From positions 153,143-217,142 of IMG/VR virus record IMGVR_UViG_3300042895_001344: a stretch of DNA of 64,000 bases, one strand, 5' to 3'. Below are positions 43,944 through 64,000 of the stretch, in pieces. The position numbers and the translations under genes are program-made. Positions within the stretch are counted from its first letter, which is position 1. Every line of letters begins with the position of its first letter. The notes below the pieces were generated by a model, which was not told where the DNA came from, searched no databases, and saw only the letters and a list, made by a program, of their open reading frames with translations.

Positions 43944-44185
43944 TGAGTCAATTTATTTCTTCTTTTATTGAATCCATAAATCCAAAACCAAAGATGAAAT
44001 TTCACGCTAACTTACATAGAAACCAATGGTCAATATATCCATTACCTTTTGTTTATTTTTATTTTGAAACATGTCAACCAGATTCTCATGTATCAATTTG
44101 GAAAAACAAAATATGTGGAGTATATTTGTCCTTTAATTGGTTGAAACATACTTACAACATCGGAATCCACAAAACAATAAACTAA
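43943..44185 (+). CDS. Hypothetical protein
   Basis: 80-aa ORF coupled on both sides. Confidence 0.6.
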   Translation: MSQFISSFIESINPKPKMKFHANLHRNQWSIYPLPFVYFYFETCQPDSHVSIWKNKICGVYLSFNWLKHTYNIGIHKTIN

Positions 44186-45255
44186 TGTTAGAGATTTTAG
44201 AGAAATATTATACTGATGGTTTGTTACATAAACAAACACATCCTACTAAAGATTTGACTATATGGAATTATTCTCCTAAAGTTCAATACGAAAGATTGTG
44301 GGATGATATTACTTTGCAATGCCGTGGATTGGTGACCAATTCAAAAGGTGATATTGTTGCAAGACCATTTAAGAAATTCTTTAACTACGAAGAACATAAA
44401 CCAGAAGATATTCCAAATGAAACTTATGTTGTTTATGAAAAGATGGATGGATCATTAGGTATTCTTTTTAATTATGAAGGAGAATGGATATTATCCACTC
44501 GTGGTTCTTTTACATCACCGCAAGCAATTAAAGGAAAAGAAATTCTTGATAGACACGACATCAGTGCGTGGAGAAAAGACAACACATATTTGTTTGAAAT
44601 TATTTATCCTGAAAATAGAATTGTTGTTGATTACAAAGGTGAAGAAAAATTAGTTGTTCTTGGTGCTTTTCATACTGAAAGTGGAATGGAAATACCTGAT
44701 AGTAGTTTATTTTGGACACAAGATTCAGGATTTGAAGTTGCTATGACATACAAAACTTGGGGAGAAGGATATGATTTACTTAAAGAAGAAATATCTAAAG
44801 ATAGAGAAGGATATGTAATTAAATTTAAGAATGGTTTTCGTATGAAAATCAAAGGAGAAGAATATAAAAGATTACATAAAATATTAACCAACTTTTCATC
44901 CAAAGATATTTGGGAATTATTGAGGGATGGAAAACCTATGGATGAATTTTTAGATAGGGTACCTGATGAATTTTACAAGTGGGTTAAACAACAAGTGAGT
45001 TCTTTTGAATATGCCAAATACAGAATTGGTGAACATTGTGGTAAGATACACGATTATTTTAGATATGGAAAATATGGTGATGTGGACCCAATGCCAACAA
45101 AAAAAGATTTTGCGTTACATTTAGAAAAATGTAATGTTGAGACATTTTATAGACCAATATTATTTGCAATGTGGGACGGAAAACCATATGAACATATTAT
45201 TTGGAGAATAATGAAACCTAAATACGAAAAACCATTTAAGAAAGATGAAAATTAA
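44185..45255 (+). CDS. T4 Rnl1-type RNA ligase
   Basis: CRGLV, KKFFN, EKMDGSLG (motif I), FEII, EGYVI, MKIK; likely start is the ATG at 44185. Confidence 0.92.
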   Translation: MLEILEKYYTDGLLHKQTHPTKDLTIWNYSPKVQYERLWDDITLQCRGLVTNSKGDIVARPFKKFFNYEEHKPEDIPNETYVVYEKMDGSLGILFNYEGEWILSTRGSFTSPQAIKGKEILDRHDISAWRKDNTYLFEIIYPENRIVVDYKGEEKLVVLGAFHTESGMEIPDSSLFWTQDSGFEVAMTYKTWGEGYDLLKEEISKDREGYVIKFKNGFRMKIKGEEYKRLHKILTNFSSKDIWELLRDGKPMDEFLDRVPDEFYKWVKQQVSSFEYAKYRIGEHCGKIHDYFRYGKYGDVDPMPTKKDFALHLEKCNVETFYRPILFAMWDGKPYEHIIWRIMKPKYEKPFKKDEN

Positions 45256-45733
45256 TAATAGATTGAGATTATACCTTGACGATATAAGAACTCCTGTGGA
45301 TGATGATTGGATTGTTGTGAGAAATTATGATGAATTTGTTGCACAAATAAAATTACATGGATTAGGTAATTTTGAAGTTATATCCTTAGATCATGATTTA
45401 GGTGAAGGTGCTATGGTGGAATACTATACAAATGTAAAAAATAATTATATGTTGGATTACAACAACATAGAAGAAAGAACGGGAATGGATTGTTGTAGAT
45501 ATTTGGTTAGTGAGAGTATGAACGAAAAAATACCCTTACCTCAAGTATATATACATTCCGCAAACCCTATTGGTTCCGCAAATATGATGGGATATATCAA
45601 CAATTATTTAATGAATTGTAGACTACCTCAAACCTGTGTAAGAGTTCAAATTAATCACACCATTAATGAAATCCACATGTTATCCCCTGAAGCACGTAAA
45701 GCAAAGTGGGATCGTAGTATGGAGAATGAATAA
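45245..45733 (+). CDS. Cyclic-phosphate-processing receiver-like domain protein
   Basis: LYLDDIR, SLDHDLG, TGMD, IHSANPIG. Confidence 0.8.
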   Translation: MKINNRLRLYLDDIRTPVDDDWIVVRNYDEFVAQIKLHGLGNFEVISLDHDLGEGAMVEYYTNVKNNYMLDYNNIEERTGMDCCRYLVSESMNEKIPLPQVYIHSANPIGSANMMGYINNYLMNCRLPQTCVRVQINHTINEIHMLSPEARKAKWDRSMENE

Positions 45734-60772: not shown

Positions 60773-61555
60773 ATGGGAAATTTTAAACATCTCACAGAAT
60801 TGGAAATTCAACAAATGACATTTGATTGGAGATACCGAGGATTTACAACATTAGAACTCTTAACAGAAGAAGAATGTGACGAAATCAATGACGAACTTGA
60901 ACGTTTACGTCAGGAGAGAAAAGGAACATTAACAGACGATGGTAAGGAGTGGGGTGAATGGGATCCATTCGCATATCCACATAAATTATCGGATAAACTT
61001 GCAAAACTATATGTTCACCCTAAATTAATTGAAGCTTGTCAGTTTCTAATGGAAGGTGAAATTGTTGGGATGCAAAGTTGGGCATACTTTAAACCACCAG
61101 GACAATTAGGTAGAGATATGCACCAAAACGCCTTTTACACGGGTTGTAAACACAATGAAATTATCAATACGGCATTAGCATTGGATAACCACGACAACAG
61201 TAATGGTTCCGTGTGGAACTACGAAGGTTCACATAGATTACAAACCTTACCAATTGAGGTTGATGAGGAAAGAACAAAAACTAATCCATCGTTTTGGAGA
61301 AATGAAAGAGGTAAACCTTGTATTATGCCTGAGGGACACGATTTCCGTAAGGTAGAAGGAATTCTAAAAAAAGGACAAGTGGTTTTATTACACTCACATT
61401 GTGTACACGGGTCGGAAGCTAACAACTCAAATAGAATGAGAAGAAACTTTTTAGGTGGATTCTTAAAAAAAGGTGCATTTTACAATCAGGGAAGTCATAT
61501 GAAACGTGAACCAATTGATGTATATGAACTTAGAGATAAACATTGGAGTGAATAG
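60773..61555 (+). CDS. PhyH-family 2OG-Fe(II) dioxygenase with a non-canonical HQN motif
   Basis: GFTTLELLT.EEC, YFKPPG, MHQN, GSHR, VHGSEAN.S.RMR. Confidence 0.85.
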   Translation: MGNFKHLTELEIQQMTFDWRYRGFTTLELLTEEECDEINDELERLRQERKGTLTDDGKEWGEWDPFAYPHKLSDKLAKLYVHPKLIEACQFLMEGEIVGMQSWAYFKPPGQLGRDMHQNAFYTGCKHNEIINTALALDNHDNSNGSVWNYEGSHRLQTLPIEVDEERTKTNPSFWRNERGKPCIMPEGHDFRKVEGILKKGQVVLLHSHCVHGSEANNSNRMRRNFLGGFLKKGAFYNQGSHMKREPIDVYELRDKHWSE

Positions 61556-61575
61556 TAGTATATTGTTATATTGAT

Positions 61576-61605
61576 AACCCTCACCTTAAAAAGTGGGGGT
61601 TTTTT
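61576..61605 (+). terminator. Intrinsic terminator
   Basis: AACCCTCAC-8 nt-GTGGGGGTT plus T-run. Confidence 0.7.
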
Positions 61606-61624
61606 GTAAAAGATTAAAAATAAT

Positions 61625-61655
61625 TTTGTATATTCGTATATATTTATTATCTTTG
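61625..61655 (+). promoter_or_regulatory. Bacteroidota-type promoter TTTG-N19-TATCTTTG driving the tRNA cluster
   Basis: Exact consensus match. Confidence 0.7.
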
Positions 61656-61693
61656 TAAAATAAGTGGTTCTTTGACATATTGAAATAAAATAA

Positions 61694-61766
61694 GCCTCGT
61701 TAGCTCAGTTGGTAGAGCAAGTCATTTGTAATGATTAGGTCTGCGGTTCAAGTCCGTAACGAGGCT
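61694..61766 (+). tRNA. trnT: tRNA-Thr(TGT)
   Basis: GCCTCGT/ACGAGGC acceptor, AGTCA-TTTGTAA-TGATT anticodon arm, GGTTCAA T-loop. Confidence 0.93.
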
Positions 61767-62036
61767 CAACAGGTGACGACGGTGGTGTGACCCCACTGTC
61801 TATGAATCTCAACTATCCGTTTGAATCTAGATGTAGAACGGTGAGAGTAGAGTTACTATAAGTTGGAGTAATTAACCATTAAGCGAAAAGTAACCTCCGA
61901 TTCATGAATCAGTCTCGGACATGATGTACATAGATGGTACGAAAAACCTGTAACTTTTTGAAACTAACTCAACGAGGACTTTGTTAACCAGTGCATGACA
62001 CGGAGGTGCAACTTAAGTTGGGTTGGAATCAAACAC

Positions 62037-62109
62037 GCTTCCTTAGCTCAGTTGGTAGAGCGCAAAACTGTTAATTTTGAAGTCGGGGGATCGTGACCCT
62101 CAGGGAGCG
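62037..62109 (+). tRNA. trnN: tRNA-Asn(GTT)
   Basis: GCTTCCT/AGGGAGC acceptor, CAAAA-CTGTTAA-TTTTG; T-loop ATCGTGA. Confidence 0.88.
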
Positions 62110-62202
62110 CAACGTGATAATCACTCCACGCAAGTGGTAAGCACCCGGCAGTAACACCGGGATGGCAATGTGGTTATTAAGAGGTAAGGAAAAGACTAAA
62201 AT

Positions 62203-62277
62203 GGGAATGTAGCTCAGTTGGTTAGTAGCAGTGCTCTCATAAAGCAAAGGTCTTTGGTTCAAATCCAAACTTTCCCA
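62203..62277 (+). tRNA. tRNA with CAT anticodon (elongator Met or Ile2; not initiator-like)
   Basis: GGGAATG/CTTTCCC acceptor with one mismatch, loop CTCATAA, GGTTCAAATCC. Confidence 0.8.
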
Positions 62278-62471
62278 CACGATTCGGTTAGTCACCGAAT
62301 AGTATGTCCAATATGATGAGAAATGGTTTGACAACCATATGGAAACGTACATTGACGTATAGGAAGAACGTCAGGGGACATCACCCCGACCTCGTGAGGA
62401 CGAAATGATTATTCCTAACCCGAAAGGGGACAGCTAAGACACCTGTGAGTTGGATAAATAAAGGTGTCAAC

Positions 62472-62557
62472 GGAGAGATGGCAGAGTTGGTCTATCGCGA
62501 CAGTCTTGAAAACTGTAGACTGTAACAGGTCCGTGGGTTCGAATCCTACTCTCTCCG
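62472..62557 (+). tRNA. trnS: tRNA-Ser(TGA)
   Basis: GGAGAGA/TCTCTCC, ACAGT-CTTGAAA-ACTGT, long variable arm, GGTTCGAATCC. Confidence 0.95.
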
Positions 62558-62820
62558 CTGTAGAGTTTGCCCGTGGTAACGGTCTAATGGGGAAACCTTG
62601 TAGACTTCTCGCGTCAAAACCCAAAACACTGATCTACTGGTGCTTGGGCTAAATGTAGAAAAAAAACGGGATCTTTTTTAATCACAAATAAAAATGTGAG
62701 CTATAATAAAGTAGCCAATTATAAGCCAACATAAAGCTGTTGGATACAGACGGAGTAATTAACCAGAGTATAGTGCAACAATTGTGATATTATAACAAAT
62801 ACCCATTTGAGTGATTATTT

Positions 62821-62892
62821 GTTCTTGTCGACTAAGGGTTAGGTCACCTCCCTTTCACGGAGGTAATACGGGTTCGAATCCCGTCGAGAATA
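62821..62892 (+). tRNA. trnE: tRNA-Glu(TTC)
   Basis: GTTCTTG/CGAGAAT, CCTCC-CTTTCAC-GGAGG, GGTTCGAATCC. Confidence 0.92.
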
Positions 62893-62930
62893 CATTTTGT
62901 TTATTGGAATATTTTTTGTATATTATCATC

Positions 62931-63281
62931 ATGAAACCGCAGATTTTTAATTTACTTACATCAATTTCACTTTTCCTATTAGGATCGGTTGGTCATTGGT
63001 ATATAATGTATTGGCAATTTAAAATGGAAAATTGGATTAAGACTCCGTGGCCTTATTTAATTGCAGTCGGTTGTACGTTCTTGTGGATTAAAGCATCTCA
63101 TTATGGTGTAAAAGCGTTTAATGGTGAAATGTGGAGTAATAGATTTATATTTTTTGTGACAGGTATTATGATTGCATCGGTTCTTTATCCGTACCATTTT
63201 GGTCAACCGTTCACAATGAAAACCGCAGTTCAATTACTGTTGGCTTTCACAATTATTATTATATCATTATTTTGGAAATAA
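62931..63281 (+). CDS. Small 4-TM membrane protein (DMT/SMR-like)
   Basis: ATG at 62931 after TTTG-N19-TATATTAT; the longer ORF call runs through tRNA-Glu; four hydrophobic helices. Confidence 0.6.
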   Translation: MKPQIFNLLTSISLFLLGSVGHWYIMYWQFKMENWIKTPWPYLIAVGCTFLWIKASHYGVKAFNGEMWSNRFIFFVTGIMIASVLYPYHFGQPFTMKTAVQLLLAFTIIIISLFWK

Positions 63282-63907: not shown

Positions 63908-63939
63908 TTTGGAATATTAGAAAACATTTCTTATCTTTG
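63908..63939 (+). promoter_or_regulatory. Bacteroidota-type promoter TTTG-N20-TATCTTTG
   Basis: Exact consensus match; the target lies at or beyond the window edge. Confidence 0.7.
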
Positions 63940-64000
63940 TAAAAGAAAGGAACAATCAGTAAAAATGTACCTGAAGTGAGAGCGACAAGTTTGCTACACC

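What the first reader, a model, noticed from the sequence alone, without database searches (positions are those of the whole stretch)
61770..62820. Structured spacers in the tRNA cluster with a repeated GGAGTAATTAACCA 14-mer
Seen: about 800 nt of non-tRNA, relatively GC-rich sequence with no convincing plus-strand ORF. The exact 14-mer GGAGTAATTAACCA occurs at 61865-61878 and 62752-62765. Spacer 62282-62468 has stems ATTCGGT/ACCGAAT, ATGGTT/AACCAT, GGGG/CCCC, CCC-GAAA-GGG and GACACCT/AGGTGTC. Spacer 62560-62745 has CCGT/ACGG, GTCTA/TAGAC, CCCAA/TTGGG and CCAACA/TGTTGG. Inference: several unannotated ncRNAs co-transcribed with tRNAs and released by tRNA processing, with the 14-mer as a conserved protein-binding loop.
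Basis: partly seen in the sequence, partly recalled or inferred. Interest (0 to 1): 0.6.

Follow-up and report, generated by a model that had tools for sequence, protein, structure and literature searches.

The report
New folded RNAs between phage tRNAs
The gaps between five tRNA genes of an uncultured T4-like jumbo phage from lakes hold six conserved, folded small RNAs that match no Rfam family; two of them carry the same 9-base hairpin loop, and they join the poorly understood class of phage tRNA-island RNAs (T4 RNA C/D, ROOL, GOLLD).

Summary
The 816 nt between tRNA-Thr, Asn, Met, Ser and Glu have no conserved ORF, are GC-richer than the window (0.41 against 0.32), and hold the exact 14-mer twice.

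The spacers resolve into six discrete modules: M1a, M1b, M2, M3, M4a and M4b. Each recurs in related IMG/VR phage contigs, always on the tRNA strand. In the window's clade they lie 0-5 nt from a tRNA, and their order among the tRNAs differs between relatives. Covariation supports a fold for each one: 94-99% of cells are paired against 19-52% in slid controls, and 3-15 pairs per module show compensatory changes.

None matches Rfam 15, T4 RNA C/D, GenBank phages or cellular genomes.

Lake metatranscriptome contigs cover S1, S2 and S3 but not the flanking ORF ends. One contig is adapter-[61777-62033]-adapter, which indicates a discrete RNA spanning spacer 1.

Both 14-mer copies form the same hairpin, GG-AGUAAUUAA-CC, on covarying stems in two unrelated RNAs. 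It also occurs in a third context in other phages.

The phage is T4-like. A near-identical contig has a GOLLD RNA starting about where the window ends.

Verdict: real, new RNA families of a known kind. Their function is unknown. The shared hairpin is most likely a docking site for a common partner.

The parts
61576..61601 (+). Intrinsic-terminator-like hairpin ending the upstream PhyH-family gene (60773-61555); marks the 5' limit of the RNA operon
61625..61655 (+). Promoter-like site TTTG-N19-TATCTTTG about 38 nt upstream of tRNA-Thr; a second copy lies at 63908-63939
   Evidence: motif not significantly enriched in the window: 7 found against 3.75 expected. The block 61608-61664 recurs in relatives. 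In L006 the same box sits 4 nt before M1a.
61694..61767 (+). tRNA-Thr(UGU); no encoded CCA
61769..61955 (+). M1a RNA, about 187 nt, eight helices. Closing stem P1 is 61769-61774 with 61946-61951. The P4 loop holds the palindrome AUCUAGAU at 61825-61832. The P6 hairpin GG-AGUAAUUAA-CC is 14-mer copy 1 (61865-61878).
   Evidence: 30 distinct homologues (A7). 39 pairs: 94.4% of cells paired against 35-44% when slid; 15 pairs with double changes, 0 of 500 shuffles as high. The CM R1 finds one copy per genome. Palindrome variants.
61956..62036 (+). M1b RNA module, a long irregular hairpin of about 80 nt. It is contiguous with M1a here and separable in relatives.
   Evidence: 22 distinct homologues (A8). 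25 pairs: 99.1% paired against 23-41% slid; 5 compensatory pairs. M1a occurs alone in L030 and L006, M1b alone in L035. RNA contig adapter-61777..62033-adapter.
62037..62110 (+). tRNA-Asn(GUU); absent between M1b and M2 in several relatives
62111..62202 (+). M2 RNA: a three-way junction (outer stem 62115-62124 with 62170-62179) plus a single-stranded purine-rich tail, 62180-62202, whose first 21 nt (AAGAGGUAAGGAAAAGACUAA) are invariant
   Evidence: 10 distinct homologues (A9). 20 pairs: 99.5% paired against 19-48% slid; 3 compensatory pairs. RNA contig 62118-62199.
62203..62278 (+). tRNA-Met(CAU)
62279..62471 (+). M3 RNA, 193 nt. It has a conserved 5' domain (invariant AGUAUGYCCAAUAUGAUGAGAA), a replaceable central insert and a conserved 3' hairpin. 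It belongs to a wider family also found in other phage groups.
   Evidence: A10: 98.2% paired against 35-52% slid. A13, 17 sequences from 29 contigs. RNA contigs 62283-62549 and 62291-62490. The global fold is not fully resolved.
62472..62558 (+). tRNA-Ser(UGA)
62559..62677 (+). M4a RNA, about 115 nt, a multi-hairpin fold closed by CCCG/CGGG. In relatives it lies between Asp-Ser, Ser-Ser or Ser-Glu.
   Evidence: A11, 11 sequences: 94.2% paired against 31-49% slid; 5 compensatory pairs. Maps. No RNA contig identical to this phage over its 3' part.
62678..62820 (+). M4b RNA, about 140 nt and AT-rich. The closing stem is 62680-62685 with 62811-62816. The hairpin at 62744-71 is RUAC / GG-AGUAAUUAA-CC / GUAY and carries 14-mer copy 2 (62752-62765). 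M4b is absent from some close relatives and present in unrelated phage tRNA arrays.
   Evidence: A12, 13 sequences: 35 pairs, 98.8% paired against 27-46% slid; 13 compensatory pairs. 95-99% identical across the clade while its neighbours diverge. 17 contigs. No RNA contig seen.
62821..62893 (+). tRNA-Glu(UUC), last gene of the RNA operon in this window

Best explanation
The four spacers are six genes for small structured RNAs (M1a, M1b, M2, M3, M4a, M4b) embedded in the tRNA operon of an uncultured T4-like jumbo phage from lakes. Proposed mechanism: (1) One precursor is transcribed from the promoter-like site at 61625-61655 through tRNA-Thr to tRNA-Glu. (2) The tRNA-maturation nucleases cut at each tRNA. 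RNase P cuts at the 5' end. RNase Z cuts after the discriminator base, since none of the five tRNAs encodes CCA. These cuts release the inter-tRNA pieces as by-products with defined ends: S1 (M1a+M1b, about 270 nt), S2 (M2), S3 (M3) and S4 (M4a and M4b). (3) Compact multi-helix folds make the released RNAs long-lived, so they accumulate like tRNAs. (4) They act in trans. The hairpin GG-AGUAAUUAA-CC, present in M1a, in M4b and in a third RNA context in other phages, is a portable docking module for one common partner, most likely a protein. M1a also carries a second loop with a covarying self-complementary 6-8-mer that could pair two M1a molecules by a kissing loop. Status of the steps: the folds, gene-like modularity, tRNA-array context and presence in RNA libraries are shown. 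Steps 1-3 are inferred from geometry plus one end-defined RNA contig. Step 4 is inference only, and the biological role remains unknown.
For: Folds: every module has a consensus structure that holds in 94-99% of cells, against 19-52% when the 3' partners are slid, with 3-15 compensatory pairs (M1a; M1b; M2; M3; M4a; M4b). Gene-like units: in more than 40 locus maps of the window's clade the modules lie on the tRNA strand, 0-5 nt from tRNAs or from each other, and in shuffled order, for example Thr-M1a-Asp, Asp-M4a-Ser, Ser-M4a-Ser, and M1b-M2 without Asn. In L006, M1a starts 4 nt after the promoter box. Conservation: modules stay 79-100% identical while neighbouring tRNA alleles fall to 66-81%. 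Each module is single-copy. Expression: six lake, freshwater or estuary metatranscriptome runs hold parts of the region. Contigs identical to the window cover 61777-62033, 61734-61988, 62003-62112 and 62283-62549; 62118-62199 matches with one mismatch. Depth is zero on the short ORF ends laid (61560-61606, 62923-62960). One contig carries sequencing adapters directly at 61777 and 62033, 10 nt after the Thr end and 3 nt before the Asn start. The read-1 adapter is on the right, which fits a + strand RNA in a dUTP library. No + strand terminator lies inside the operon. Shared hairpin: in M1a the loop core UAAUUA is invariant in 30 sequences and its closing pair covaries U-A/G-C. In M4b the 22-mer around it is invariant in 13 sequences from different phage groups, on a stem that covaries G-C/A-U. 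The same loop tops a covarying stem (CUUAGG/CCUAAG against CUCAGG/CCUGAG) after a tRNA-like element in L141, L151 and L152. M1a P4 loop: AUCUAGAU, CUCGCGAG, AUCGCGAU and UCGCGG are all self-complementary, including the central adjacent pair, which cannot pair within one hairpin. Their self-duplex energies are -7 to -13 kcal/mol.
Against: All RNA evidence is assembled contigs, so true 5'/3' ends, strand and abundance are not measured. Only about 85 nt of flanking ORF sequence served as a silent control. The contig's 5' end (61777) lies inside P1. That fits the usual 5' loss in library preparation, but it could mean P1 is not in the mature RNA. No RNA contig matching this phage covers the 3' part of M4a or any of M4b. 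The UAAUUA self-duplex is only -0.4 kcal/mol, so self-kissing by the 14-mer loop is doubtful. No partner protein was identified. The palindrome test on single loops is not significant by shuffling; the argument rests on a few coordinated substitutions among related sequences. M2's invariant tail has no significant complement in the operon. The alignments come from one phage clade plus a few others, so the sequences are not independent.
Confidence: 0.75

Rival explanations
1. They are cis-acting processing spacers only. The structures exist to keep neighbouring tRNAs folding independently, or to present RNase sites, and the excised pieces are waste with no role of their own.
For: In this clade they are always inside tRNA arrays and abut tRNAs by 0-5 nt. 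No target or partner was found. M4a/M4b RNA was not seen.
Against: Loops and junction strands, not just stems, are invariant. The same hairpin loop is kept in three unrelated contexts. M3-like RNAs occur with no tRNA called in the fetched locus (L133, L134, L143, L144) or kilobases from one (L130, L135, L141), and M1a can be the first gene after the promoter. Many tRNA pairs in the same arrays are only 1-9 nt apart, so tRNA maturation needs no spacer. S1 and S3 contigs are assembled where the laid ORF ends have zero depth.
Confidence: 0.12
2. M1a, or another module, is a new self-cleaving or otherwise catalytic RNA that frees itself from the preceding tRNA. This would explain the fixed 'Thr, 1 nt, M1a' junction.
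For: The Thr <1> M1a spacing is constant in about 30 maps. M1a has highly conserved junction strands in a compact multi-helix fold.
Against: No hit to any ribozyme family in Rfam 15, even at E<=10. M1a also follows His (117 nt), Met (238 nt) or a promoter. RNA contig 61734-61988 bridges the Thr-M1a junction. RNase Z already explains the cut.
Confidence: 0.05
3. The modules are outlying parts of the neighbouring GOLLD RNA: one giant transcript with nested tRNAs, as is known for GOLLD linkers.
For: GOLLD lies in the same island in relatives and in the near-identical contig L002, about 1.5 kb after tRNA-Glu. GOLLD linkers sometimes hold tRNAs (PMC12286853).
Against: Three small ORFs and a second promoter-like site (63908-63939) separate Glu from GOLLD. 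The modules shuffle and come and go independently of one another. S1 has its own discrete ends. No module matches the GOLLD model. L002's GOLLD has no TAATTA.
Confidence: 0.04
4. They are decayed tRNA genes or other non-functional relics (pseudogenes, homing-endonuclease scars, small ORFs).
For: Location in a mosaic tRNA array with gene gain and loss. A T-loop-like 12-mer in M1b. Larger spacers in relatives hold ORFs up to 267 aa.
Against: No tRNA-model hit in any spacer at E<=10. Covariation supports non-cloverleaf folds. The modules are at least as conserved as the tRNAs. No ORF is conserved (the M3 centre is replaced).
Confidence: 0.03

Closest known systems
Phage T4 RNA C and RNA D (rnaC, rnaD; 'species 1 and 2' stable RNAs)
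   Same: Small stable RNAs of 139 and 119 nt encoded inside the tRNA cluster of a T4-type phage, on the tRNA strand, 1-6 nt from tRNA-Arg and from each other. Their role is unknown (PMC3014915). The window's phage has T4-type portal, Gp23, prohead protease, terminase and Rnl1-type RNA ligase.
   Different: No sequence or structure homology. CM R1 with filters off and all six HMMs at E<=10 give only noise on the T4 region. T4 RNA C ends in a tRNA-like T-arm/acceptor; the modules here have none.
GOLLD RNA (RF02032)
   Same: A phage RNA of lake origin found near tRNA islands, with unknown function and kissing loops in its assembly (PMC12286853). It is physically in the same RNA island of this phage clade.
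   Different: GOLLD is about 800 nt and forms 14-mer cages. The modules are 80-190 nt, do not match the GOLLD model and are separate genes. Oligomerisation of M1a is only a hypothesis.
ROOL RNA and the manA RNA motif (phage-associated self-assembling RNAs)
   Same: Phage or prophage RNAs, ROOL often near tRNA islands, whose quaternary kissing loops are conserved or covary (PMC12286853). RNAs under 200 nt can form cages (bioRxiv 10.64898/2026.07.01.735769). M1a has a covarying self-complementary loop.
   Different: No Rfam match. No structural or biochemical data exist here.
tRNA-spacer-derived bacterial sRNAs such as 3'ETS-leuZ
   Same: Functional small RNAs released from tRNA precursors by the tRNA-processing nucleases.
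   Different: Those are short, weakly structured base-pairing sponges from cellular operons. These are large, highly structured, phage-encoded, and have no detected complementary target.

Membership tests
Any Rfam 15 family | Score at or above the family's gathering threshold | tested here: not met
   The window at gathering threshold gives only 5 tRNAs. 61500-63000 at E<=10 gives nothing credible in the spacers. Eleven relatives' loci carrying all six modules give only tRNA and GOLLD hits.
T4 RNA C / RNA D | Sequence or structure homology to T4 rnaC or rnaD | tested here: not met
   CM R1 (M1a) with filters off on L127 scores at most 7 bits. nhmmer --max with all six module HMMs gives no hit on rnaC or rnaD on the RNA strand at E<=10. 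Covariance models of M1b-M4b were not built.
T4 RNA C / RNA D | Location: in the tRNA cluster of a T4-type phage, same strand, abutting tRNAs | tested here: met
GOLLD | Match to the conserved 3' domain model RF02032 | tested here: not met
   No GOLLD hit in the window or G000. GOLLD is a separate downstream gene in L002, L005, G001, G002 and G003.
tRNA / tRNA-like | Cloverleaf detectable by ARAGORN or RF00005 | tested here: not met
   No tRNA call in any spacer. The covariation-supported folds are not cloverleaves.
Phage tRNA-island structured ncRNA (the kind, not a homology family) | Conserved secondary structure with compensatory changes | tested here: met
Phage tRNA-island structured ncRNA (the kind, not a homology family) | Present as RNA, more abundant than neighbouring mRNA | tested here: inconclusive
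   Metatranscriptome contigs cover S1, S2 and S3, with zero depth on the short ORF ends laid, and one adapter-bounded S1 contig. But these are contigs only, and none from this phage covers the 3' part of M4a or M4b.
Kissing-loop self-assembling RNA (ROOL/GOLLD/DIS-like) | Self-complementary loop whose palindromy is kept through substitutions | tested here: inconclusive
   The M1a P4 loop shows AUCUAGAU, CUCGCGAG, AUCGCGAU and UCGCGG, but there are few independent changes and single-loop shuffles are not significant. The 14-mer loop core UAAUUA is invariant and its duplex is weak.
Kissing-loop self-assembling RNA (ROOL/GOLLD/DIS-like) | Oligomer observed (native gel, SEC, cryo-EM) | not testable with these tools
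   No RNA 3D or complex tool is available.

The most novel reading that the evidence does not exclude
The GG-AGUAAUUAA-CC hairpin is an address tag. It lets a phage factor, or RNA-RNA contacts, gather several different tRNA-island RNAs (M1a, M4b, tRNA-like elements) into one particle. M1a would multimerise through its covarying palindromic loop. This would be a small-RNA counterpart, or a cargo or partner, of the GOLLD nanocage encoded 1.5 kb downstream, possibly tied to the phage's tRNA-repair module (Rnl1-type ligase and cREC protein).
Probability: 0.1. Interest if true: 0.85.

Novelty: new member of a known kind. Interest (0 to 1): 0.6.

Why it matters
Phage tRNA islands have long been known to hold RNAs of unknown function. 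T4 RNA C and D are still unexplained, and GOLLD and ROOL were recently shown to form cages. This locus adds six compact, well-supported RNA families from the same niche, in a T4-like phage that also carries GOLLD. It also provides a sequence-defined hairpin shared by unrelated RNAs. That hairpin gives a direct experimental handle: a bait for a partner, and loop mutants for assembly. The modules are small enough (80-190 nt) for structure determination. They show that annotating these regions as 'tRNA cluster plus spacers' misses genes.

Tried and rejected
- Rfam at gathering threshold and at E<=10: only tRNAs in the window.
- GenBank phages by blastn and megablast with the region, with a divergent M3 and with a divergent M4b: only tRNAs or nothing. 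tblastn of the upstream PhyH protein found nothing.
- M1a core pattern across one genome per prokaryote species: one hit, a 2.3-kb contig in a Methylococcaceae MAG with the layout Thr-M1a-M1b-Asp-Ser. I take it for a binned phage fragment, not evidence of a host.
- T4 RNA C/D homology: rejected.
- Search for a base-pairing target of M2's invariant tail within the operon: best -14.7 kcal/mol, inside the shuffle range. A genome-wide scan timed out.
- Kissing partner for the 14-mer loop in GOLLD: no TAATTA in L002's GOLLD.
- Tertiary or pseudoknot covariation in M1a by all-against-all column pairs: swamped by phylogenetic correlation, nothing usable.
- Host assignment from Bacteroidota-type promoter boxes: 7 found against 3.75 expected, not significant. 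The host stays unknown.
- Shared flanking proteins between the window and the other phage groups that carry M3 or M4b: almost none, so no co-occurring partner protein could be proposed.
- Complex prediction, structure prediction and the large protein searches were not used. Nothing here rests on a protein.
Full report
**Source**

The window is the last 64 kb of a 217,142-bp linear IMG/VR viral contig, estimated 65% complete. A relative is a complete 335,630-bp genome. The window encodes a T4-type portal (Gp20), Gp23 capsid protein, prohead protease and T4-type terminase. It also encodes an Rnl1-type RNA ligase and a cREC-domain protein. This is therefore a distant T4-like jumbo phage. Lake-water metagenomes hold the region. 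No GenBank phage matches it outside the tRNAs. The host is unknown.

**Checking the observation**

ARAGORN and Rfam agree on five + strand tRNAs: Thr, Asn, Met, Ser and Glu. The four spacers total 816 nt at GC 0.406, against 0.324 for the window. They have no conserved ORF.

The 14-mer is exact at 61865 and 62752 and has no other near copy. As a repeat it is only mildly surprising in this genome. Single-sequence folding is unremarkable, with z from -1.0 to -2.0, so the case rests on comparison with relatives.

**Relatives and modules**

The upstream PhyH-family gene brought in 80 related loci. Short conserved patterns then brought in more: the M1a core in 40 contigs, M2 in 15, M3 in 29 and M4b in 17.

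blastn and nhmmer show that the spacers are not conserved as wholes. They are conserved as six blocks with sharp edges:

| Module | Window coordinates |
|---|---|
| M1a | 61769-61955 |
| M1b | 61956-62036 |
| M2 | 62111-62202 |
| M3 | 62279-62471 |
| M4a | 62559-62677 |
| M4b | 62678-62820 |

In more than 40 distinct locus maps of the window's clade, the blocks lie on the tRNA strand and 0-5 nt from a tRNA or from each other. Their order varies. Examples are Thr-M1a-Asp, Thr-M1b-M2-Leu, Asp-M4a-Ser, Ser-M4a-Ser-M4a, M1b-M2 with or without tRNA-Asn between them, and M4a-Glu with or without M4b.

In L006, M1a begins 4 nt after the promoter-like box, so it is the first gene of the operon there. 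Neighbouring tRNA alleles differ by up to a third between relatives, while the modules stay 79-100% identical. Each module is single-copy in the contig and, for M1a, in the complete relative. These are the properties of genes, not of filler.

**Structures**

*M1a.* There are 30 distinct sequences (A7). I drew eight helices from the alignment and counted them. Of all cells, 94.4% form standard pairs, against 35-44% when the 3' partners are slid by 1-3 columns. Fifteen of 39 pairs show changes on both sides, and no shuffle out of 500 reaches this. The compensatory changes are:
- P1: G-C to A-U.
- P2: G-U to U-G.
- P3: CCC/GGG to CUC/GAG.
- P5: C-G to G-C and G-C to A-U.
- P7: a variable hairpin that carries an insertion in some relatives.
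- P8: A-U to U-A and to C-G.

The junction strands are nearly invariant.

*The other modules:*

| Module | Alignment | Cells paired | Slid controls | Compensatory pairs |
|---|---|---|---|---|
| M1b | 22 sequences | 99.1% | 23-41% | 5 |
| M2 | 10 sequences | 99.5% | 19-48% | 3 |
| M3 | 8 close sequences | 98.2% | 35-52% | 3 |
| M4a | 11 sequences | 94.2% | 31-49% | 5 |
| M4b | 13 sequences, some from other phage groups | 98.8% | 27-46% | 13 of 35 pairs |

M2 is a three-way junction followed by a single-stranded tail whose first 21 nt are invariant.

A 17-sequence alignment of the wider M3 family shows covarying hairpins and an invariant 22-nt strand. It favours a YCCA/UGGR stem over one helix of the close-set fold, so the global M3 fold is unresolved.

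These sequences are related to one another, so the shuffle counts are not probabilities. The slid controls and the many double changes are the stronger argument.

**The 14-mer**

In M1a the 14-mer is hairpin P6: GG(G)/CC(C) closing a 9-nt loop AGUAAUUAA. The core UAAUUA is invariant in all 30 sequences, and the closing pair switches U-A to G-C.

In M4b the consensus fold places the second copy in the same element. A stem RUAC/GUAY covaries G-C to A-U, followed by a small internal loop, GG/CC and the same 9-nt loop. The 22 nt around it are invariant in all 13 sequences.

A regex over all loci found the loop a third time, in L141, L151 and L152. There it tops a covarying stem (CUUAGG/CCUAAG against CUCAGG/CCUGAG) directly after a tRNA-like element. 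So the hairpin is a portable module in at least three RNA contexts.

The core is self-complementary, but its duplex is worth only -0.4 kcal/mol. Invariance across contexts fits one fixed external partner better than it fits self-pairing.

A second M1a loop (P4) holds AUCUAGAU, CUCGCGAG, AUCGCGAU, UCGCGG or shorter GC palindromes. The changes keep self-complementarity, including at the two central adjacent bases, which cannot pair within a hairpin. The self-duplexes are worth -7 to -13 kcal/mol. This is the signature of a dimerising kissing loop, but it rests on few independent events.

**Expression**

Six metatranscriptome runs hold 20-30% of the region's words. I laid four of them.
- Contigs identical to the window cover 61777-62033, 61734-61988, 61921-62032, 62003-62112, 62283-62549 and 62297-62439.
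- Contigs covering 62118-62199 (1 mismatch) and 62291-62490 (2 mismatches) are near-identical.
- Depth is zero on the laid ORF ends, 61560-61606 and 62923-62960.
- Depth is also zero, or from a relative only, on 62594-62828.

In run X17 a 306-nt contig reads read-2 adapter, then 61777-62033 with no mismatch, then read-1 adapter. Many fragments must therefore share those two ends. They lie 10 nt after the Thr 3' end and 3 nt before the Asn 5' end. The adapter orientation fits a + strand RNA if the library is dUTP-stranded.

I read this as a discrete S1 RNA (M1a+M1b) that has lost a few 5' nucleotides in library construction. The covarying P1 argues that the 5' strand belongs to the RNA.

These are assembled contigs, so levels and exact ends remain unmeasured. 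M4a and M4b are not confirmed as RNA.

**Mechanism**

A terminator closes the upstream gene at 61576-61601, and no + strand terminator follows inside the operon. A TTTG-N19-TATCTTTG site lies 38 nt before tRNA-Thr. None of the five tRNAs encodes CCA; the next bases are CAA, CAA, CAC, UGU and CAU.

From established knowledge of tRNA maturation, CCA-less precursors are cut after the discriminator by RNase Z and at the 5' end by RNase P. With 0-5 nt spacing, those two cuts alone would release each module with defined ends. The compact folds would then protect them. What they do afterwards is not known, and I found no target for M2's tail.

**Comparison with known systems**

The closest case is T4 itself. 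RNA C (139 nt) and RNA D (119 nt) follow tRNA-Arg with 1-6 nt gaps, and their roles are unknown (PMC3014915). There is no homology: the M1a covariance model with filters off and all six HMMs find nothing there.

ROOL and GOLLD are phage RNAs often near tRNA islands that assemble through kissing loops (PMC12286853). RNAs under 200 nt can also build cages.

GOLLD is in fact part of this island. It is found in relatives and in contig L002, which differs from the window at 2 of 9228 positions. There the GOLLD 3' domain lies 455-857 nt beyond the window's end, downstream of the second promoter-like site at 63908-63939. The modules are nevertheless separate genes.

None of them matches Rfam 15, GenBank phages or cellular genomes, apart from one probable phage fragment in a MAG.

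**Verdict**

These are new RNA families belonging to a known kind of system. The shared hairpin and the covarying palindrome are the most interesting leads, and both are directly testable.

Noticed in passing
window 63908-64000; L002 9136-10085: A second copy of the promoter-like TTTG-N20-TATCTTTG site lies at 63908-63939. In contig L002 (2 mismatches in 9228 nt against the window) a GOLLD RNA follows (RF02032, 296.9 bits), with its conserved 3' domain 455-857 nt past the window end. The last ~55 nt of the window are therefore probably the 5' start of GOLLD. GOLLD is also present in relatives G001, G002 and G003.
   Followed up: partly
L005 11833-12238: The complete 335-kb relative carries a tmRNA (RF00023, 91.4 bits) about 2 kb downstream of GOLLD. 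The island there holds tRNAs, the new RNAs, GOLLD and tmRNA.
   Followed up: no
window 44185-45252 (+) and 45245-45730 (+): An Rnl1-type RNA ligase (PF09511, 2e-19) is followed immediately by a cREC_REC 'cyclic-phosphate processing receiver' protein (PF20274, 1.3e-22). This looks like an RNA-repair pair, 17 kb upstream of the tRNA island. An AAA_33 (kinase-like) hit exists elsewhere in the window but was not located.
   Followed up: partly
window, several ORFs (coordinates not resolved individually): Pfam hits to the T4 portal Gp20, Gp23 major capsid, prohead protease S77, T4-type terminase, PhoH, a ClpB-like AAA protein, dUTPase and Hsp20. The phage is a distant T4-like jumbo phage.
   Followed up: partly
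tRNAs 61694-62893 against L003-L122: tRNA alleles are strongly mosaic between close relatives (Thr 67-100%, Met 66-100% identity), and whole tRNAs (Asn, Asp) are precisely present or absent. The interleaved RNA modules stay 79-100% identical. This points to frequent cassette-like exchange at tRNA boundaries.
   Followed up: partly
L152 3901-3997, 4091-4209, 4570-4680: In a different phage group that carries M4b there are three tRNA-like units (AGTCAGG...CCTGACT acceptor, TTCGAATCC T-loop) with long inserts in place of a normal anticodon arm. ARAGORN does not call them. The second is followed directly by the GG-AGUAAUUAA-CC hairpin.
   Followed up: no
relatives' tRNA islands, e.g. L007 11721-11834, L085 3656-3752, L007 9578-9764: Further conserved non-coding spacer families exist: Leu-Arg, 114-440 nt, 11 distinct sequences; Met-Asp/Asp-Ser, 79-98 nt; M1a-Glu, 187-213 nt. 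Larger spacers hold ORFs up to 267 aa, possibly homing endonucleases. The catalogue of island RNAs is larger than the six in this window.
   Followed up: partly
L128 (CAIMEB010000164.1, 2322 bp): This is the only hit for the M1a core among one genome per prokaryote species. It is a 2.3-kb contig binned into an uncultured Methylococcaceae MAG, with the layout Thr-M1a-M1b-Asp-Ser. It is probably a mis-binned phage fragment, but a methanotroph host cannot be excluded.
   Followed up: no
window 62071-62352 (-): A 93-aa minus-strand ORF runs across tRNA-Asn, M2, tRNA-Met and the start of M3. It is an artefact of the mechanical ORF listing, not a gene.
   Followed up: yes
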